Source of the DNA: Octopus bimaculoides
Taxonomy: Eukaryota
DNA length: 64,000 bases
NCBI RefSeq assembly: GCF_001194135.2
Contig: NC_068994.1
Span: forward strand, 1,315,767-1,379,766
Direction of reading: 5' to 3'
Program-made: the position numbers and the translations under genes
Notes under the pieces: model-generated
The model's database searches: none
Told to the model about the DNA's origin: nothing
What the model saw: the letters and a program-made list of their open reading frames with translations, nothing else
Shown: piece after piece, positions 19,845 through 63,830 of the stretch
How positions within the stretch are numbered: position 1 is the stretch's first letter
Layout of the letters: the number at the start of each line of letters is the position of its first letter

Positions 19845-20772
19845 NNNNNNNNNNNNNNNNNNNNNNNNNNNNNNNNNNNNNNNNNNNNNNNNNNNNNNNN
19901 NNNNNNNNNNNNNNNNNNNNNNNNNNNNNNNNNNNNNNNNNNNNNNNNNNNNNNNNNNNNNNNNNNNNNNNNNNNNNNNNNNNNNNNNNNNNNNNNNNNN
20001 NNNNNNNNNNNNNNNNNNNNNNNNNNNNNNNNNNNNNNNNNNNNNNNNNNNNNNNNNNNNNNNNNNNNNNNNNNNNNNNNNNNNNNNNNNNNNNNNNNNN
20101 NNNNNNNNNNNNNNNNNNNNNNNNNNNNNNNNNNNNNNNNNNNNNNNNNNNNNNNNNNNNNNNNNNNNNNNNNNNNNNNNNNNNNNNNNNNNNNNNNNNN
20201 NNNNNNNNNNNNNNNNNNNNNNNNNNNNNNNNNNNNNNNNNNNNNNNNNNNNNNNNNNNNNNNNNNNNNNNNNNNNNNNNNNNNNNNNNNNNNNNNNNNN
20301 NNNNNNNNNNNNNNNNNNNNNNNNNNNNNNNNNNNNNNNNNNNNNNNNNNNNNNNNNNNNNNNNNNNNNNNNNNNNNNNNNNNNNNNNNNNNNNNNNNNN
20401 NNNNNNNNNNNNNNNNNNNNNNNNNNNNNNNNNNNNNNNNNNNNNNNNNNNNNNNNNNNNNNNNNNNNNNNNNNNNNNNNNNNNNNNNNNNNNNNNNNNN
20501 NNNNNNNNNNNNNNNNNNNNNNNNNNNNNNNNNNNNNNNNNNNNNNNNNNNNNNNNNNNNNNNNNNNNNNNNNNNNNNNNNNNNNNNNNNNNNNNNNNNN
20601 NNNNNNNNNNNNNNNNNNNNNNNNNNNNNNNNNNNNNNNNNNNNNNNNNNNNNNNNNNNNNNNNNNNNNNNNNNNNNNNNNNNNNNNNNNNNNNNNNNNN
20701 NNNNNNNNNNNNNNNNNNNNNNNNNNNNNNNNNNNNNNNNNNNNNNNNNNNNNNNNNNNNNNNNNNNNNNNN

Positions 20773-25165: not shown

Positions 25166-25229
25166 TTAATTATACACACAGTCTTCTTGAGCAGAATTAA
25201 CACTGACTTAGTTCTGTCTGTCCAAAAAG

Positions 25230-25500
25230 CCAGTATAGTTTTAAGTCAGGTCAAGGGTCAATGGATATGATATTCAGTTTGTGGCAAGTTCAGGAGAAGG
25301 CCCAGGAGTACAATAAAGGCCTCTATGTAGTATTTGTTGACCTCGCAAAAGCCTTTGGCTCAGTATATAGGCAGGCTTTGTGGAAAGTATTAGCAAAACT
25401 TGAGATTCACAAGCATTATCCTGGAAATGTGTGGAATATCTGGTAGAGAGGCTTTCTTGATCAAATCTCAAATGTAATGCTGTGGACACAACCTTTGCAT
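25230..25500 (+). mobile_element. RTE-clade LINE reverse-transcriptase fragment
   Basis: Translation MDMIFSLWQVQEKAQEYNKGLYVVFVDLAKAFGSVYRQALWKVLAK matches the RTE/BovB RT motif DMIF..RQLQEK..E....LY..F.DL.KAFD.V.R..LW. Confidence 0.85.
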
Positions 25501-55170: not shown

Positions 55171-57079
55171 TAATCATTCATCATCATCATCGTTTAACGT
55201 CTGCTTTCCATGCTGGCATGGGTTGAACGATTTGACTGAGGACTAGTAAAAAAGAAGGCTGCACCAAGCCCCAATCTGATCTGGCAGAGTTTCTACAGCT
55301 GGATGCCCTTCCTAACGCCAACCACTCTGACAGTGTAGTGGGTGCTTTTACGTGCCACCAGCACGAGGACCAGTCAGGTGGCTCTCGCAACGACCACACT
55401 CTAAAGGCGTTTTTTACATGCTACCTGCACGGAAGCCAGTCCGGCGGTATTGGCAACAATCACAACCGGATGTGCTTTTAACGTTCCACTGGCACGAGTG
55501 CCAATCAGGCGGTACTGTCATTGGCCATGTCAGCAATTTTGATTTTGATTTCCTCAATAGATCTTCACAAGCAAAGTTTATTGTCCAATACTGGCAGAGT
55601 AGTTAGCTTGGTGGGTTGGGTGATATGCTTAGCAGTATGTCATCTGTTGCTGTGCTCTGAGTTCAAATTCTGCTGAAGTCGATTTTGCCTTTCAGAGTTG
55701 ACAAATTAAGTATCAATAAAACATTAGGATCAGCGAAATCAACTAGTCCCCTTCCCCAAAATTTCAGGTCTTGCGCCTTTAGTTGAACGGATTATTACCA
55801 TTATTCAATAGTTTCATAGTTCTCACTCTAGTTTGTAAGTAGATAAGAAGTAACAGCTCACCTGGATAAGACACCACCCTAACACAGGTACCATTCCATA
55901 GATAATCGATGGTACCAAGTTATTCTTACATACAGCCATATGAGGTGAAGTAAGAGACAATAACGTCTTCTAATGTGCTTATAGCAGATTAGAATCCTTA
56001 ATCTATTGATATTTTAGTGACGGCGTTAATGGTTTGGTGTTGTGGTATCAAGGTGTTGTGTCTCTGGTTGTTGCAGACACTCTGAGAGTGGCGGCATCAA
56101 CAGGGGTGATGTTAGGGGTGAGGTGAGGTTAGTAAACACATCACATTCAGCCAATGAAGGGGACTCTATGGGGTTGCTTGAGCTGCAAGGAACCACAGCA
56201 CACACCCCTATATTGCATCATATCGATCACTACGCTCTTAATAAAGAGTGGGTACATTAGATACTGTAGTCCTGGATACACAAGGGCTAAATAGTAAGAG
56301 CTGGAATAGATCATATACCTTATTTCATCCAGACTGACCTGGGGTTAAATAACAACAACAATCTTGACATATTAAAGCAAGTGTTTTCTCCCAGCTCTTA
56401 TTACCCCTTTTGCTCTGCTATCCCAAATCTCCCACCACCACCACCATTCCACTAGAGACAACCTCTAGCAGACAGCAGGAACTTGGAAAGAAAGAATTTG
56501 TCAAAGACAAAAATCATTTATCCAGTTTTTAGAGGGGTGGGAGGTTGGGGTGGGGTGGGGAAAGGAGGGAGTTAATCCTTTAGGATTTACATGTTTTATC
56601 CTCAGTGTATTTCTTCTACTTTCAGAGTGTGTTTGATGAAGGGAAGTGTGTATATGTGTATGTATGTATGTATATATAAATGTGCACGTGTGTGTACATA
56701 CAAATAAACACACACGCACACACATATGCCAATATACATACATGTATATATTGTGTGTATATTTGTAACATGTCAATCACTTTAATCCAACAACTCTCTC
56801 ATGTTCTTGCTCTCTTTCTCTCTCCTCCTCACATAAATATATTACTTACAAACACACAGATTAATGTAGTTTTATTGATAGAATCAAGTCATACACTAAA
56901 GACATGTCGTGTTGATGTCCCATATACTAAACCATACATAGGGTTTCAATCCTAACCAACAGTTTTTGGTTAATCTTGACCCGGAAATGAAAATCTAAAA
57001 AATATACTGGAATGGGTGTAAAACAATGTGTAGTAAACGAATATGAAAAAAAAAAAAAAAGGAATGCAAAACAACGGGA

Positions 57080-57720
57080 GGGTAGGGAGAGGACTTCGGA
57101 AAATTCACAAGATCAGAACTTTTCCTTCTTAACTTTTAGGAAAATGGCGTTTTTTCCAACGAAATTTTATAGAAATACCTTTGAAATGGCATCTATTACG
57201 ATTATAAAGAAATTTGAGGGGAAAATCTTTTCCAAGAGGGTTGGAACAAGACTTCTCTCGTAACTTTTAGGAAAATGGGAGTTTTTTCAATGAAATTTTA
57301 TAGAAATACCTTTCAAATGGCATCTATTACAATTATAAAGAAATATGAGGGGAAAATATTTTCCAAAGGGATAGGAAGAGGACTTCGGAATATTCAGAAT
57401 ATCCAAGCTTTTCTCCGTAACTTTTAGTAAAATGGCGTTTTTTCCAACGAAATTTTATAGAAATACCTTCCAAACGGCATACATTTCGATTATAAAGAAA
57501 TTTGTGGGTTTCCGATTTTTCCCTCGTTATATTTCGAAACCCCATTCAACTTTCTACAGATACCCGAGAGTAGAACTATTACACTCCGTAGTGGTTTTTT
57601 CTACCCACTTTCAATAATTTTTAATGTTTTGGCTTCATTTTTGTTTCATTTTATCTTCAATTATTTTACGCTTTTTTAAACCTTTCCGTCGTTATTCTCA
57701 TTTATTTGTTATCACTTTCC
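57080..57720 (+). repeat. Left arm of large inverted repeat; outer part made of ~131-157-bp tandem units
   Basis: Reverse complement of ~59770-60615. The unit anchor aacttttag recurs at 57131, 57262 and 57419. Confidence 0.9.
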
Positions 57721-57783
57721 CCCCTCTTCCCCTCTCTCAATCTCCTCGCGACATCGACGAGAGTCTGTTGTTCTCCGCTCAAA

Positions 57784-57808
57784 ATGTCGGCGCTCAAAAT
57801 TGCTAAAG
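57784..57808 (+). CDS. Putative first coding exon (MSALKIAK, phase-1 donor)
   Basis: CpG-rich leader, caaaATG context and a consensus donor AAG|GTAAGT at 57809. Product not recognised. Confidence 0.55.
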
Positions 57809-58189
57809 GTAAGTGGAAACATTCGATGCCATTTGGAAACTGTTTTGCAGCTTAAGGCTCATATATCCCGAGAGATCTAGATATCCTGTCATTTCAGCAG
57901 GTATCTAAAAGATATTGTTTTAATACACTTTCACTTGTTTCAAACAAACACTAGCATGGTTTTTCTTTTTTTGTTGTCCAGACTTCGTTACCAGTAATTT
58001 TTATAACTTCAGCATTCGTTTATTATTCTTTTCAAACTCCTTTCATTTTTCAAGGTAATCCACACTCAAGGAAAGGTATTTCTGCCAAATGTCATCTTAA
58101 AATATGTGTAAAGAAAGGGGGCTGATGCGGTTTCGCAGCACCTCACCTTCCTTCAAAATTGCATTTTTAAAAAAAAGATTTCTTCGGAA

Positions 58190-59269
58190 ACATATCTGGG
58201 TGGACATTGGAATTAGACACTGAGGGAAAATGGCTGTAACTTTTTTATTTTTTTGTTTTGGCGATTTTCGTTTTCGATAATATGTTCTACATGTCACGGT
58301 CATGCGATTCCCCCTAAAAAAAATTTTGGACCAACACCCCACACCCTCACACACGAGGGGGGGGGGCGGTTTGGCGATTTTCATTTTTGACATTGTGTTC
58401 TACATGTCCAGGTCGTACGAATAGCCTTCTCGCAACTTAGATGTGAAAATGAACGGCTCAAAAAGGATTACATGTGGAGTCCCCACCACGAAACTTGATA
58501 TGCTAGAAATAACAGCTAAACGCGGACAATCCAAATCTTGCATTGGTCCAGATGGACTATATGTAATCTGAACCTTTCTCCCCCTTATTTACNNNNNNNN
58601 NNNNNNNNNNNNNNNNNNNNNNNNNNNNNNNNNNNNNNNNNNNNNNNNNNNNNNNNNNNNNNNNNNATGTTCTACATGTCACGGTCATGCGATTCCCCCT
58701 AAAAAAAATTTTGGACCAACACCCCACACCCTCACACACGAGGGGGGGGGGCGGTTTGGCGATTTTCATTTTTGACATTGTGTTCTACATGTCCAGGTCG
58801 TACGAATAGCCTTCTCGCAACTTAGATGTGAAAATGAACGGCTCAAAAAGGATTACATGTGGAGTCCCCACCACGAAACTTGATATGCTAGAAATAACAG
58901 CTAAACGCGGACAATCCAAATCTTGCATTGGTCCAGATGGACTATATGTAATCTGAACCTTTCTCCCCCTTATTTACGTGGGATTCCGTAAAAAAAAAAT
59001 TAAATAAGGGGAGTTAGGGTTAGGGTTAGGGTACGACCGGGACATGTGGAACACAATGTCAAAAATGAAAATCGCCTAAATAAAATAATAAATACCCCCC
59101 CCCCCGTGTGTGGGGGTGGGGGGAGTTGGGTCCAAAATTTTTTTAGGGGGAATCGCATGACCGTGACATGTAAAACACATTATCGAAAACGAAAATCGCC
59201 AAAATTAAAAAATAAAAAAGTTACAGCCATTTTCCCTCAGTGTCTAATTCCAATGTCCACCCATATCTG
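58190..59269. mobile_element. Inner inverted-repeat element (~230-bp arms at ~58190-58418 and 59031-59269)
   Basis: tgggtggacattggaattagacactgagggaaaatggctg... pairs with ...cagccattttccctcagtgtctaattccaatgtccaccca. The interior has a direct duplication across an N gap and (TTAGGG)3 at 59014-59031. Confidence 0.8.
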
Positions 59270-59283
59270 TACATATATATAAG

Positions 59284-59712
59284 GGTAATCTTCCAGTTTC
59301 GAGTGGTTAAAAAAGTAAATAAAATACAAGGGAAATAACTGAACATCTTACCAGTTTTATCCGTACTACTTTGTTTATAAATAAATCACGTGATTTGATT
59401 GGCGTTAACTGTTTATATGTAAATCACACACGTGATTGAATATCATAGTCTCTTACGAGAAATCGAAAATGCCTCGTGGAAGACCGGCTGCACAACATCT
59501 TATTGTTGCTGAAAACAATAAGATGTTGGAAAATTTTAAACTTTAATAAAAAAAAATTTCGTCACATGCTGTTAGATTCTTTTCTGCCTGTTAAAATTCC
59601 GTCGCATGCTGTTTTAGAGAAAAAGTAGTACGGATAATACTGGTAAGTGGTTCCGTTATTTCCCTTGAATATTTTTATTTATTTCTTTTAATCTCGAAAC
59701 TGGAAGATTACC
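59284..59712. mobile_element. MITE with ~95-bp TIRs (GGTAATCTTCCAGTTTCGAG...)
   Basis: The terminal 20 bp are perfectly inverted and the homology continues inward to ...ccgtactact / agtagtacgg. It is flanked by TA-rich sequence. Confidence 0.85.
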
Positions 59713-59769
59713 GATATATATATATATATATCCCCATATATATATACAGACAGATAGATAGAGAGAGAG

Positions 59770-60615
59770 AAGGTAATAACAAGTGAATGAAAATAACGAC
59801 GGAAAGGTTAAAAAAAAAGCGTAAAAATAATTGAAGATAAAATGAAACAAAAATGAAGCCAAAACATTAAAAATTATTGAAAGTGGGTAGAAAAAAACAC
59901 TACGGAGTGTAATAGTTCTGCTCTCGGGTATCTGTAGAAAGATGAATGAGGTTTCGAAATATAACGAGGAAACATTCGAAATTCCATAATTTTCTTTATA
60001 ATCGTAATACATGCCATTTGAAAAGTATTTCTATAAAATTTCATTGAAAAAACTCCCATTTTCCTAAAAGTTATGAGAGAAGTCTTGTTCCTACCCTCTT
60101 GGAAAATATTTTCCCCTCAAATTTCTTTATAGTCGTAATATATGCCATTTGAAAGGCATTTCTATAAAATTTCGTTGAAAAAAAATCCCATTTTCCCTAA
60201 AAGTTACGAGAGAAGTCTTGTTCCTACCCTCTTGGAAAATATTTTCCCCTCAAATTTCTTTATAATCGTAATATATGCCATTTGAAAGGCATTTCTATAA
60301 AATTTCGTTNNNNNNNNNNCTAAAAGTTACGAGAGAAGTCTTGTTCCTACCCTCTTGGAAAATATTTTCCCCTCAAATTTCTTTATAATCGTAATATATG
60401 CCATTTGAAAGGCATTTCTATAAAATTTCGTTGGAAAAAAATCCCATTTTCCCTAAAAGTTACGAGAGAAGTCTTCTTCCTACCCTCTTGGAAAATATTT
60501 TCCCCTCAAATTTGTTTATAATTGTAATATATGCCATTTGAAAGGTATTTCTATAAAATTTCATTGAAAAAAAAAAAAAAACGCCATTTTCTTAAAAGTT
60601 ACAAAAGAAAAGCTA
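59770..60615 (-). repeat. Right arm of large inverted repeat; 133-bp tandem array on the outer side (about 4 full units plus a partial one, with one N gap)
   Basis: The anchor ctaaaagtta recurs at 60064, 60197, 60320 (after the gap) and 60453. The inner unique part is the reverse complement of ~57500-57720. Confidence 0.9.
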
Positions 60616-60685: not shown

Positions 60686-61176
60686 TTGACATCCCTGGAA
60701 TAGGATGAGTGATCATGGCCAAACTGTCAATCGAGAGTTCTACTGTAATGTTTTGAAGTGTCTGAGGGAGGACATTTGATGAAAGCAACCATATCTGGGG
60801 AGAACATAGAACTGGACTCTTCATGACGACAATGCACCCTGTCACCGAGCTTTCCTTACTCGTGAGCTTCTCACCAGAAACAGCATAGTATCCCTTCCAC
60901 ACCCACCCCACTCACCAGATTGAGCACTTGTGGACTTCTGTCTCTTCTCCAAGATGAAAATGCAGCTCAAAAGTCACTGCTTTAAAACCATTATCAAAAT
61001 TAAGAGTGAATCACAGAAGGTTCTCGATTCACTTACAGAAAACGACTTCCAGGCTGGATTTCAAAGTGGCAAAAATACTGGAACTGGTGTATTGCTGCAC
61101 AAGGAATGGTGTTAAAATTTTGCTAAATAAGTTATTTTCTCTTTAGCATAACTTGTCTGGGAACTTTCTGATATGT
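60686..61176 (+). mobile_element. Mariner transposase pseudogene, C-terminal half plus right TIR
   Basis: Translation GQTVNREFYCNVLKCLRE...WTLHDDNAPCHRA...PHPPHSPD*ALVDFCLFSKMK...FQ.W contains the mariner H.DNAP and HPPYSPDLAP.DF motifs, with stops and frameshifts. Confidence 0.9.
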
Positions 61177-63319
61177 ATATGTATGTATTTAAAACATACA
61201 CAGTAATTGAAGTGTACAGTATCATATATCCATTCCGGTCAATCTTACCAATTGGTTTCGCAATCAGGGTTCAATGATCATTAGATTACAGTCCAATTAT
61301 GTAACCCTACACTCTTCAAAGGTAGCTGTTATGGAATGAAATATGGTGACTGCTTTATAATACACACATATATCATCATCATCACCATTGTTTGAAGTCT
61401 GTTCTCCATTGCTGGCATGGATTGGATGGTATAAGAGGTGGCAAGCTGGAGGGCTGCAGCAAGAGTTAGTTGTCTGCTTTAGCATGCTTTTTATGGTTGA
61501 TGCCCTCCCTAATGCCAACCACTTTACAGAGTGAACCAGGGTGTTTTTACGTGGCCCCACCACAGTTACTTTTTACATGGTGTTGGCACAAACATACATA
61601 TAAATATATCATCATCATCATCATCCTTTAACGTCTGCTTCCCATACTGGTATGAGTTATCTTGTCTCTAGCAAAGGTCATTAGGCCAATTAAAATTTAA
61701 ATACATGCATTGGTTCACATGCTTGTTGAAACACACAAATGTTATTGAACATCATGAAGGAGATAAACATGAAAATCTGCCAATACCAAAAAAAAAAAAA
61801 CGAAGAAGAAGCCTGCTTCATGAACCTAAGGATACCATCACACCACAGAAAAAATCAAGACTCATGGAACTAATTCAACAGGAATACCAATACACAAGCC
61901 ATGCCTGTGACAGACGGACAGACACTTTAGCAACAAGCTACAGTGGATGAGGCAACAGCAACAACCACAACATCATAGAAACAAGGACAAATATAGAAAC
62001 AACATCAAAGGAATTATGTTTGTCTGGAAACAACTGGACAACTTTGTGGGCTGCTGAAAGTGTCTCTGCATAAGGAGTTCAGGACACTCTTGTGATAACA
62101 GGAAGCACATTTAATCTTAAGTAGAGGGTTAAACCAAATGTGATATCTTTGATGGCTTTGTGACATGTATTGTATTTCTCATGGAAACCACTCTTTTAAG
62201 ACATTATTATAGCAGTGTGAAGCATTGTTAAAGACTTCTCCGTCAGATGAAACTCTGATTGTGTAGTGGCTGTTATTACAGACTGGATTTTTTGATACTA
62301 TGTGAAAGTGACTTGAAGTCTACATTATGCATGCATGTATTTACGTATGTAAATATTTACTCATACATAATACATACATGCAAACATACATGCATGCATA
62401 CATACATATATGTTTGAATGTGCGCATGTGTGATGCTTGTGTGTGTGTGTTTTGTGGGTGTTACAATCTCTCTCTCTCACTTTCTCTCTCTTTTTCTATC
62501 TTTCTAATTATGTATATTGCTGAAGTTGTTGTTGTAGTCAATGTAAACGTTGTTGCTTTTGTACTTTTTGTTGTACATACGGAATACAGAGTAAACGAGG
62601 TGATGTGAGCCAGGTTTTGTAATGAAGTGATCAATCCCCATCACTACCACCACCACTACCACCCTCATCATTGCCCCACACCACTACTACCACAAGCACC
62701 ACTGCCACTGCTACTCCCCCTCCACCCCACCACCACCAATCTTGCCACCATCACAAAACCACAGTCCCTGGTTAAAAGAACTTCATTGAAGAGATTTAAC
62801 AAAAACCTCATCAGACCAATCTCACCAGTTGGCACCAGTTCACAAAGCTATATAATCTCCATAATCAAAACTAATTACTATAGAACCATTCCAATTGAGT
62901 TTGAGTCTATTAACCTCAGGTGAACTAGTGAAGATCACGGCCAGCAACCATAAGTAAGACACACAGACAGAATGAATATTTGAATAAAATATCACAAGTT
63001 AGATTCAAACCGTTTCCAGAATATTTCAAAAGAGAGGAAAGGTTTTTCTGGCAAATTTTAATTTTATATTTGTGGGTATTTTTTTTACCTTAAAATCGTA
63101 TTTCTTCTTCTTCTGGTGACAGTGGTTGTTGTTGCTGAGAGGATCATGTTGGAATCATGTAGACCTGGGATTAACCCACATGACACAGTACCATGGGCCT
63201 CTGTCGACCAATACATTATGGGGAGAACTGGGTAGATGGAACCTGTCAGCACACAAATGTTGAAGAGGAAGAAGAATATGAAGAGTATGATGGTTTCATG
63301 GCACTGACCAGACTCTCAA

Positions 63320-63830
63320 ATGTTATACATCACTGATCACAATACACTTTTCAAACAAATATTCTCTCAGCCACCTATTGTAGGCTTTAGATGGAATATA
63401 AATATAAGAGAAGTATTAACCTCTACTTCTGACTCCAAGAAAACTAACATTGGAGCTTCTGAACGCAGCACCTTGAAAAACGGCCACAAGAGGGCTAAGT
63501 CTTGTTCATTGTGCAATAACATGTGTCAAGTGAATTCCATCATGAATCATAACAGAAATGTCATGAGTTATACTGAAGGTGAGACATGTAAAGATTCCCA
63601 TTTGTTATCTGCAACAGAATGCACCAAACACAACTTGATTTATATAAGTTGTACAACAGAACAATTAAACAAAAGGTTCAATGGGGGCACAGATATGACG
63701 TCAAGCACAAAAGCATAGTTCGAGAGAACTTGCTGAACATTTTACATCAAGTGGCTGCAATTTTGAGGAACACCTGAAAGTGCACATTTTCAGAAAATAT
63801 TTTGAGACTCTGCTACACTTTCAGTCCTCA
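63320..63830 (+). mobile_element. Penelope-like element remnant: GIY-YIG endonuclease region
   Basis: Translation IFSQPPIVGFRWNINIREVL...CSLCNNM...C.....LSATECTKHNLIYISCTTEQLNKRF matches the PLE linker (P..P.V.FRR..NL), the C..C motif and a decayed IY.I.C...YIG.T...L..R motif. It continues after a frameshift as ELAEHF. Confidence 0.75.

What the first reader, a model, noticed from the sequence alone, without database searches (positions are those of the whole stretch)
57080..60615. Nested (matryoshka) inverted-repeat architecture: foldback-like element with modular arms enclosing two more TIR elements
Seen in sequence: the outer arms (57080-57720 and 59770-60615) are reverse complements. Each has a ~220-bp unique inner part and an outer tandem array of ~132-bp units, with unequal copy number left and right. 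Between them lie a CpG-rich exon-like segment, a second inverted-repeat element (58190-59269) and a third (59284-59712). The block retains visibly more CpG than the rest of the window. Established: Foldback/Galileo-type elements have long TIRs built from internal tandem repeats and can carry or rearrange host DNA. Inference: either one composite foldback transposon that captured or carries a gene 5' end, or two oppositely oriented copies of one element flanking a host promoter.
Basis: partly seen in the sequence, partly recalled or inferred. Interest (0 to 1): 0.75.

Follow-up and report, generated by a model that had tools for sequence, protein, structure and literature searches.

The report
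Foldback-like inverted repeat, CpG-preserved island
A real 3.5-kb inverted-repeat block, most likely a decayed foldback-type transposon remnant with two small transposons inserted in its middle, stands out because it has kept all its CpG while the DNA around it has lost three quarters; it is otherwise an ordinary repeat nest.

Summary
The outer arms (57080-57720 and 59769-60614) are inverted copies: a 205-nt unique inner domain (90.7% identical) plus arrays of 131-133-nt units. Corrections:
- Gap 58593-58666 is an unmerged contig overlap (311 identical nt on each side), so inner element 2 is about 678 bp, not 1063.
- Gap 60310-60319 lies inside the right array, so the unit count there (4 full units against 2 on the left) is a minimum.
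- The two inner elements lie side by side in the spacer; they are not nested in each other.

The block has CpG o/e 1.0 against 0.27 outside, and the switch falls at the arm ends.

I could not decide between one foldback transposon, two inverted copies and a local inverted duplication. No target-site duplication flanks the block or either arm. The two outer ends stop 38 nt apart in unit register. No other copy lies in the 64 kb, and no tool here holds this genome.

Best reading (about 0.4): one decayed, non-coding foldback-type element that carries a promoter and first-exon-like core, later hit by two MITE-like insertions. It is either younger than its surroundings or kept unmethylated. Interest is modest.

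The parts
57080..57720 (-). Left outer arm. Read from inside to outside on the minus strand: unique domain 57720-57516, partial unit 57515-57428, long unit (157 nt) 57427-57271, unit (131 nt) 57270-57140, terminal partial long-type unit 57139-57080.
59769..60614 (+). Right outer arm: unique domain 59769-59975, partial unit 59976-60063, units 60064-60196, 60197-60309 (cut by gap 60310-60319), 60320-60452 and 60453-60591, then terminal partial unit 60592-60614.
   Evidence: The three inner full units are near-identical, which indicates recent local amplification.
57595..57667 (.). Core of the unique domain that is identical in both arms (partner 59824-59896). The middle 145 nt are 97% identical, against 90.7% for the whole unique domain plus partial unit.
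   Evidence: P = 0.0016 for so long a run under random placement of the differences
57351..57364 (.). 14-bp perfect palindrome GGAAAATATTTTCC, one per repeat unit. The others are at 57220 (1 mismatch), 60101, 60234, 60357 and 60490. It occurs nowhere else in the window.
   Evidence: 6 matches against 0.01 expected
57721..58190 (+). Unique, asymmetric part of the spacer. With the inner elements removed the spacer is about 547 bp and shows no internal inverted symmetry apart from a TA microsatellite.
   Evidence: no other copy in the window; no Pfam match in its open frames
57784..57814 (+). Exon-like start: CAAAATG, 8 codons plus 1 nt (MSALKIAK), then a consensus donor AAAG|GTAAGT (57809-57814). 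A CT-rich tract lies at 57716-57750 upstream.
   Evidence: Read directly from the sequence and from the translation. Use as an exon is inferred, not shown.
58191..59269 (.). Inner element 2 with its 8-bp target-site duplication (CATATCTG at 58191-58198 and 59262-59269). The element proper is 58199-59261. Its TIRs of about 240 nt each hold two sub-repeats of about 115 nt. True length is about 678 bp.
58593..58977 (.). Assembly artefact inside element 2: 74 N plus a second copy of the 311 nt that precede the gap.
   Evidence: 311 of 311 identical, both copies abutting the gap
59285..59712 (.). Inner element 3: a 428-bp MITE-like element with TIRs starting GGTAATCTTCCAGTTTCGAG, inserted in a (TA)n tract. 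The size of its target duplication cannot be read.
59713..59768 (.). Microsatellite part of the spacer, (TA)n, (CAGA/TAGA)n and (GA)n, abutting the inner end of the right arm. The left arm abuts a comparable CT-rich tract.

Best explanation
Once the 385-bp assembly duplication and the two later insertions are removed, the original object is an inverted-repeat module of about 2 kb. Its arms measure about 640 bp and at least 845 bp, around an asymmetric spacer of about 550 bp.

I read it as one old, non-autonomous foldback-type DNA transposon copy.
- The arms are its long terminal inverted repeats. Each is an inner unique domain plus an array of 131-133-nt units, and every unit carries a 14-bp perfect palindrome. 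By analogy with Galileo and Tetris, such an array would multiply the binding sites for a transposase, or now for a host factor.
- The spacer is what remains of the internal region. It includes a promoter-proximal CT-rich tract and a short first exon with a consensus splice donor.
- It encodes nothing, and it probably cannot move any more, because its ends are unequal and no target duplication is left.
- Two small TIR elements then landed 23 bp apart in the spacer, one with a clean 8-bp duplication.
- The right array later gained extra near-identical units.

The whole block has escaped the methylation-driven CpG decay that marks the rest of the window. Either it arrived after most of that decay, or, as I think somewhat more likely given that the arms are 9% diverged and no target duplication survives, it is kept unmethylated in the germ line because it behaves as a promoter-like island.

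Shown: the anatomy, the gap artefact, the 8-bp duplication of element 2, the CpG contrast, and the absence of coding capacity.
Inferred: the transposon origin, single-unit insertion, promoter activity, and the methylation state.
For: - Both arms show the same order of parts from the inner end to the terminal 'long-type' partial unit. The outer ends therefore fall within 38 nt of the same point, which is the natural end of the array. That is expected for defined element termini and unlikely (roughly 6%) for a random duplication breakpoint.
- The modular TIR design (unique domain plus tandem units of variable number, non-coding middle) is the design described for Tetris (PMC4079207).
- The 14-bp palindrome occurs once per unit and only in the arms.
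- No protein domain is found in any open frame of the block.
- The compositional switch sits at the arm ends. CpG o/e goes from 0.85 to 0.40 and (TG+CA) o/e from 0.66 to 1.40 across 60615/60616; (TG+CA) o/e goes from 1.19-1.54 to 0.65 across 57080. The block thus behaves as one unit distinct from its flanks.
- All 9 CpGs of the right arm's inner 295 nt are also present in the left arm, which has 12, despite 9.3% divergence. The arms therefore did not diverge under methylation.
- In Octopus bimaculoides, 5mC is confined to the bodies of expressed genes, and transposons are unmethylated and CpG-dense (PMC9476566).
- The 8-bp duplication of element 2 bridges the two contigs, which supports the assembled inverted arrangement.
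Against: - No target-site duplication of 4-10 bp lies at any plausible pair of boundaries beyond what chance gives. If one of 8-9 bp had existed and were as old as the arm divergence, it should still be recognisable in about 4 cases out of 5.
- The terminal nucleotides differ: the left arm runs 38 nt further in unit register, and nothing beyond the ends is homologous.
- There is no second copy of the arms, units or spacer in the 64-kb window, although another repeat family occurs about 7 times there.
- There is no transposase and no known autonomous partner.
- Arm identity of 86-93% is low for a young foldback copy.
Confidence: 0.4

Rival explanations
1. Two copies of one repeat family that carries tandem repeats (a MITE or a Helentron-associated element of the kind common in molluscs) were inserted independently in opposite orientation, about 550 bp apart. 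One sits upstream of a host promoter and first exon, the other in its first intron.
For: - Each arm has the same internal order, and both begin at the same inner point next to a microsatellite-like tract.
- Mollusc HINEs have a flank with a microsatellite, then a tandem array, then a short flank, and make no target duplication (PMC7492417). The absence of a duplication around each arm fits that.
- The exon-like segment lies in unique DNA between the arms.
- DNA transposons favour open promoter regions (general knowledge), which would also explain elements 2 and 3.
Against: - No sub-terminal inverted repeats or terminal palindrome of the HINE kind were found in either arm.
- The sequence on the spacer side of the two microsatellite tracts is unrelated.
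- Two independent full-length hits of a family that has no other copy in 64 kb would be a coincidence.
- It does not explain why the CpG-preserved domain ends exactly at the outer ends of the arms.
Confidence: 0.2
2. A local inverted segmental duplication with no transposon involved. The left arm and spacer are a host gene's upstream tandem-repeat region, promoter and first exon. A replication template switch or fold-back repair at a GA/CT microsatellite copied the upstream region in reverse into the first intron.
For: - No target duplication and no matching termini.
- Both inner junctions lie in GA/CT-rich low-complexity DNA.
- No other copy in the window.
- The island-like CpG state and the exon-like start fit a host promoter.
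Against: - The duplication breakpoint would have to fall within 38 nt of the natural end of the array.
- The right arm directly abuts unrelated DNA, followed by a 5'-truncated mariner remnant, without signs of a reciprocal deletion.
- Modular arms with a palindrome in every unit are typical of transposon ends.
Confidence: 0.2
3. The inverted arrangement is an assembly artefact of a gappy short-read assembly: a false join through repeats.
For: - Two gaps lie inside the block and 22 in the window.
- The two arms sit on different contigs.
- The contig joins run through repeated DNA (element 2 and the unit array).
Against: - The contig ends at gap 1 overlap by 311 identical nt, and the 8-bp duplication of element 2 is split across the two contigs.
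- The arms differ by 9-14% and in unit structure, unlike the perfect palindromes that assembly artefacts produce.
- The CpG composition is continuous across both joins.
Confidence: 0.05

Closest known systems
Tetris (Drosophila virilis) and Galileo (D. buzzatii) foldback-type elements
   Same: [quoted passage not shown]
   Different: - Tetris has an outermost unique flanking domain and 8-10-bp target duplications. Here the arrays run to the ends, the ends are unequal and no duplication is present.
- The unit is 131-133 bp, with no sequence relation tested or expected.
- Copy number in the genome is unknown.
Classical FB elements of Drosophila melanogaster and sea-urchin TU elements
   Same: Inverted arms made of tandem sub-repeats that reach the termini, with unequal arm lengths (my own knowledge; both are named as foldback examples in PMC4079207).
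   Different: Their repeats are short (10-31 bp), they make a 9-bp target duplication, and all copies share their termini. None of these is seen here.
Mollusc MITEs and Helentron-associated elements that carry tandem repeats (DTC84 of Donax; Cg_HINE of Crassostrea gigas)
   Same: Mollusc non-autonomous elements that carry short arrays of satellite-like units of about 130-170 bp next to a microsatellite and unique flanks. HINEs make no target duplication (PMC3879986; PMC7492417).
   Different: Those elements hold one central array between two different flanks. Here there are two arrays in inverted orientation at the outside, and no sub-terminal inverted repeat or terminal palindrome was found.
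Unmethylated promoter islands within methylated gene bodies of invertebrates
   Same: A few kilobases with CpG o/e near 1 inside DNA that shows strong CpG-to-TpG/CpA decay. In octopus, methylation is confined to the bodies of expressed genes (PMC9476566).
   Different: There is no transcript, start-site or methylation data here, and the island coincides with a repeat structure rather than with a known gene start.

Membership tests
Foldback-type DNA transposon (FB / Galileo / Tetris) | Long terminal inverted repeats (hundreds of bp) | tested here: met
   Arms of about 640 bp and at least 845 bp; 86% identity over 567 nt, with pieces at 90-93%.
Foldback-type DNA transposon (FB / Galileo / Tetris) | TIRs contain tandem sub-repeats of variable number | tested here: met
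   131-133-nt units: 2 full on the left and at least 4 full on the right.
Foldback-type DNA transposon (FB / Galileo / Tetris) | Both ends finish with the same terminal sequence | tested here: not met
   The left arm runs 38 nt further in unit register, and there is no homology beyond 57080 or 60614.
Foldback-type DNA transposon (FB / Galileo / Tetris) | Target-site duplication of 7-10 bp at the two ends | tested here: not met
   A scan of 85 x 90 boundary pairs found only low-complexity or chance-level matches; the best was a 7-mer, where about 0.5 is expected.
Foldback-type DNA transposon (FB / Galileo / Tetris) | Several copies in the genome that share termini | not testable with these tools
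   No second copy lies in the 64-kb window, and no collection here holds this genome. The protein-word search with an arm ORF found nothing. That negative means little, because the control search with the neighbouring mariner gave only 4 distant hits. Metagenome scans gave 0 hits.
Foldback-type DNA transposon (FB / Galileo / Tetris) | Transposase in autonomous copies (P/THAP-like or MULE-like) | tested here: not met
   No Pfam family was found in any open frame of the block. This is compatible only with a non-autonomous copy.
Helentron-associated non-autonomous element (HINE) carrying tandem repeats | 5' and 3' sub-terminal inverted repeats and a 3' palindrome; microsatellite in the left flank; no target duplication | tested here: inconclusive
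   A microsatellite-like tract lies at each inner end and no duplication flanks either arm. No sub-terminal repeats were found within an arm.
MITE (inner element 2) | Short, non-coding, with TIRs and a target-site duplication | tested here: met
   About 678 bp after the gap is collapsed; TIRs up to about 240 nt; a perfect 8-bp duplication CATATCTG; no Pfam match. Copy number could not be tested. The superfamily is open: 8 bp fits hAT, P, Merlin or Zisupton (my knowledge).
MITE (inner element 3) | Short, non-coding, with TIRs and a target-site duplication | tested here: inconclusive
   428 bp with TIRs of about 100 nt at about 84%. It sits in a (TA)n tract, so a TA duplication or a longer AT-rich one cannot be told apart.
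Unmethylated promoter island | CpG o/e near 1 over more than 500 bp in a CpG-depleted context | tested here: met
   o/e 1.00 over 3452 nt against 0.27 outside; every sub-part lies between 0.68 and 1.69.
Unmethylated promoter island | Transcription start and spliced first exon in use; CpGs unmethylated in the germ line | not testable with these tools
   Only sequence signals are available: CAAAATG, the GTAAGT donor and the CT-rich tract.

The most novel reading that the evidence does not exclude
The module is a domesticated, transposon-derived palindromic promoter or insulator inside the body of a methylated, expressed octopus gene. Inverted arrays of a 14-bp palindromic factor-binding site keep 3.5 kb unmethylated and drive an internal first exon. 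In read-through pre-mRNA the two arms pair into a duplex of about 550 bp (calculated -802 kcal/mol against about -275 for shuffled arms). Such a duplex would be a natural substrate for the heavy A-to-I editing of coleoid cephalopods, or for small-RNA production.
Probability: 0.1. Interest if true: 0.6.

Novelty: new member of a known kind. Interest (0 to 1): 0.3.

Why it matters
As a repeat structure it is ordinary: TE-rich cephalopod genomes are expected to hold foldback-like elements and nested MITEs.

Two aspects could matter.
- Foldback-type elements with modular arms have apparently not been catalogued in cephalopods; my literature search for 'foldback', 'octopus' and 'transposable' found no paper. 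Such elements elsewhere seed satellites and cause inversions.
- The block is a sharp CpG-preserved island in DNA that otherwise bears the signature of long-term germ-line methylation. This gives a concrete, testable case of either a very recent composite insertion or a repeat-derived unmethylated promoter within a gene body.

If the block is transcribed through, the arms would form a long RNA duplex, which is relevant to cephalopod RNA editing.

Tried and rejected
1. 'The block is an insertion into a mariner copy, so the flanks give the empty site.' The right flank is a mariner transposase remnant (PDB Mos1 residues 209-307, E = 1e-6; profile positions 213-346 at 60711-61111). However, a profile of six full-length mariner transposases and tblastn find nothing in the left flank. 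A DPE..K..W motif I had seen there by eye is not supported. Rejected.
2. Target-site duplications were sought around the whole block, around each arm, and of the retroposon type. None was found.
3. Homology beyond the arm ends: none.
4. Hidden symmetry in the spacer: none except the TA microsatellite.
5. RNA genes. Rfam matches only microsatellite-derived microRNA look-alikes outside the block, all below their cut-offs. No tRNA was found.
6. Other copies elsewhere.
   - Window self-BLAST: none.
   - Exact look-ups of two block ORFs and ten window ORFs: not on record.
   - Protein-word search with the arm ORF: no hit.
   - Two metagenome DNA scans: no hit.
   - These negatives say little, because the collections evidently do not hold this genome's repeats. 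The mariner control gave only 4 hits at 46-59% identity.
7. Finding the host gene. No convincing conserved exon appears among 82 longer open frames. I left the third protein search unused because the control showed it would be uninformative.
8. Pfam on the block's open frames: nothing.
9. HINE-type sub-terminal repeats within each arm: not found.
Full report
**Scope**

I could not verify the species, and I use the octopus literature only as context.

Yes.
- The repeat finder gives inverted pairs 57418-57667 / 59824-60073 (250 nt, 90%) and 57141-57343 / 59991-60193 (203 nt, 93%), plus many unit-to-unit pairs.
- BLASTN aligns 567 nt of the two arms at 86%.
- Tandem Repeats Finder reports period 131 with 2.0 copies on the left and period 133 with 4.5 copies on the right.
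- Cutting both arms at the unit motif shows the same order of parts from inside to outside:
  - a unique domain of about 205 nt (57516-57720; 59769-59975);
  - a partial unit;
  - full units: two on the left, one of which carries a 26-nt near-palindromic insert; four on the right;
  - a terminal partial unit of the 'long' type.
- The three inner units of the right arm are almost identical to one another. The outermost right unit resembles the outermost left unit. The inequality in unit number is therefore a recent local amplification in the right arm.

**2. The gaps**

- Gap 1 (58593-58666). The 311 nt before the gap are identical to the 311 nt after it, and each copy ends or starts exactly at the Ns.
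  - These are two contig ends that overlap and were not merged. The sequence is continuous, and 385 positions should be deleted.
  - Inner element 2 is therefore about 678 bp, not 1063.
- Gap 2 (60310-60319). It lies in the right array. The contig on its left stops at unit position 113 and the contig on its right starts at position 1.
  - About 20 nt of a unit, including its A-run, are missing where 10 N are written.
  - The alternative, that the two contigs overlap by 246 nt, needs 8 mismatches. Those mismatches are unit-specific and partly shared with left-arm units, so I take the units as distinct.
  - The right-arm count is a minimum.

**3. The inner elements**

- Element 2 (58199-59261). 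Its TIRs align over about 240 nt with one 13-nt indel, and each holds two sub-repeats of about 115 nt.
  - It is flanked by a perfect direct repeat CATATCTG at 58191-58198 and 59262-59269.
  - That is a classical insertion with an 8-bp target duplication.
  - The two copies of the duplication lie on different contigs, so they also vouch for the join, and with it for the inverted arrangement of the outer arms.
- Element 3 (59285-59712). It has TIRs of about 100 nt (about 84%) and sits in a (TA)n tract, so its duplication cannot be sized.
- The two elements are 23 bp apart, side by side in the spacer. With them removed, the spacer is about 547 bp: 470 bp of unique DNA plus a TA/GA microsatellite. 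It has no internal symmetry.
- None of the open frames in the block matches a Pfam family. Rfam and tRNA scans are empty inside the block.

**4. The CpG contrast**

- The block has CpG o/e 1.00, TpG 0.90 and CpA 0.87. The remaining 55 kb has 0.27, 1.51 and 1.49. That is the signature of methylation-driven deamination outside the block and none inside.
- Every part of the block is CpG-normal: 0.68-1.69.
- The switch falls at the arm ends.
  - Across 60615/60616, CpG o/e goes from 0.85 to 0.40 and (TG+CA) o/e from 0.66 to 1.40.
  - Across 57080, (TG+CA) o/e goes from 1.2-1.5 to 0.65.
- The inner 295 nt of the arms are 90.7% identical. The left arm has 12 CpGs there and the right arm 9, and all 9 are shared; the extra left-arm CpGs read CpA on the right at two sites. 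The arms therefore did not diverge under methylation.
- For O. bimaculoides, a methylome study reports that 5mC is confined to the bodies of a set of expressed genes, and that transposons are unmethylated and CpG-dense (PMC9476566).
  - On that background the flanks look like old gene-body DNA.
  - The block is then either a later arrival or a protected island.

**5. Tests of a transposon origin**

- I scanned all plausible pairs of outer boundaries for direct repeats of 3-10 bp. Only poly-A matches and chance-level matches appeared.
- The same holds for each arm treated as its own copy and for retroposon-type duplications beyond the microsatellite tails.
- The right arm ends at 60612-60614. 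The left arm continues for 38 nt more of unit sequence to 57080. Nothing beyond either end is homologous.
- No second copy of any part of the block lies in the window, while a SINE-like family occurs about seven times.
- The right flank is a 5'-truncated, stop-riddled mariner transposase remnant at 60711-61111. I tested whether the left flank carries the missing half, which would have given an empty site. It does not.

**6. Other features**

- Each unit carries a 14-bp perfect palindrome, GGAAAATATTTTCC. It has six matches, all in the arms, against 0.01 expected.
- The middle 145 nt of the unique domain are 97% identical between the arms, including a 73-nt perfect run (P = 0.0016). This points to gene conversion between the arms or to constraint.
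- The spacer starts with a CT-rich tract, then CAAAATG, eight codons and AAAG|GTAAGT. That combination is unlikely by chance and looks like a short first exon. No transcript data are available here.
- Folded as one RNA, the arms give -802 kcal/mol against about -275 for shuffled arms, with 86% of the left arm paired to the right arm.

**7. Interpretation**

Three readings survive.

(a) One decayed non-autonomous foldback-type element, about 0.4.
- For: the arms are collinear right up to the natural end of the array, the TIR design is modular, every unit holds a palindrome, and the compositional unit coincides with the arms.
- Against: no target duplication, unequal termini, no other copy seen, and arm identity of only 86-93%.
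- The exon-like start would then be the element's own 5' exon, as in internally deleted P-type elements.

(b) Two inverted copies of a repeat that carries tandem units, flanking a host promoter, about 0.2.
- This resembles mollusc HINE or DTC84-type elements.
- The sub-structures of those families were not found.

(c) A local inverted duplication of promoter-proximal host DNA at a GA/CT microsatellite, about 0.2.
- It explains the lack of transposon hallmarks.
- It needs a breakpoint that happens to fall 38 nt from the end of the array.

An assembly artefact is unlikely, about 0.05.

In all three readings the block is non-coding. Its present effect would come from its DNA and RNA properties: a promoter-like unmethylated island, arrays of a palindromic site, and a long potential duplex.

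**8. Comparison and novelty**

- It works like, and looks like, the foldback elements Tetris and Galileo (PMC4079207). It fails two defining tests (termini and target duplication), and a third (copy number) could not be run.
- I therefore describe it as foldback-like rather than file it as a member.
- It is most probably a new member of a known kind. Interest is modest, at 0.3.
- The CpG island-like state and the possible RNA duplex are the only parts that might repay follow-up, and all the decisive tests are simple once the full genome, long reads, RNA-seq and the public methylomes are at hand.

Noticed in passing
window 60711-61111 (+): A 5'-truncated mariner (Mos1-like) transposase remnant with many stops. 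It covers profile positions 213-346 of about 350 and starts about 100 bp from the end of the right arm. Its 5' half was not found anywhere in the window.
   Followed up: yes
window 59014-59031: Three perfect telomere-type hexamers, (TTAGGG)3, in the centre of inner element 2.
   Followed up: no
window 61350-61660; also near 12166, 12832, 28161, 32601, 44658, 55173: A SINE-like dispersed repeat with about seven partial copies in the window (70-88% identity). Some copies are locally richer in CpG than their surroundings.
   Followed up: partly
window 57045-57060 and 60571-60585: An A16 run lies 20 bp outside the left arm, perhaps the tail of a retroposon to its left. An A15 run sits inside the outermost right unit, where other units have A6-A8. 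They are the only long direct match between the two ends, and both are low-complexity.
   Followed up: partly
whole window outside 57080-60615: Uniform strong CpG depletion (o/e 0.27, mostly 0.1-0.4 per kb) with TpG/CpA excess of about 1.5 over 55 kb. In octopus this would be typical of the body of a methylated, expressed gene, yet I could not recognise any conserved exon in the window.
   Followed up: partly
window 25207-25443 (+): A reverse-transcriptase fragment (Pfam RVT_1, E = 1.6e-5, below the curated cut-off). Open frames at 10596-11056 (-) look to me like a LINE C-terminal region but had no Pfam match.
   Followed up: partly
window 63308-63715 (+): A 136-residue open frame that reminded me of the C-terminal zinc-finger/GIY-YIG part of Penelope-like elements. 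Pfam gives only a weak DUF6398 match (E = 0.028), so this is unconfirmed.
   Followed up: partly
window 55960-56175 (-): Several mariner transposases give weak tblastn matches here on the minus strand (a PPYSPDLAPCDF-like motif, E = 0.5-1.7). The profile search did not confirm them. They are probably chance or a very decayed second mariner.
   Followed up: partly
window, 22 gaps (for example 547-1012, 7712-8517, 19845-20772): Most assembly gaps are bordered by TA/CA microsatellites. Gap 1 of the finding shows that at least some written gaps hide overlapping contig ends, so other gaps in the window may also carry duplicated flanks.
   Followed up: no
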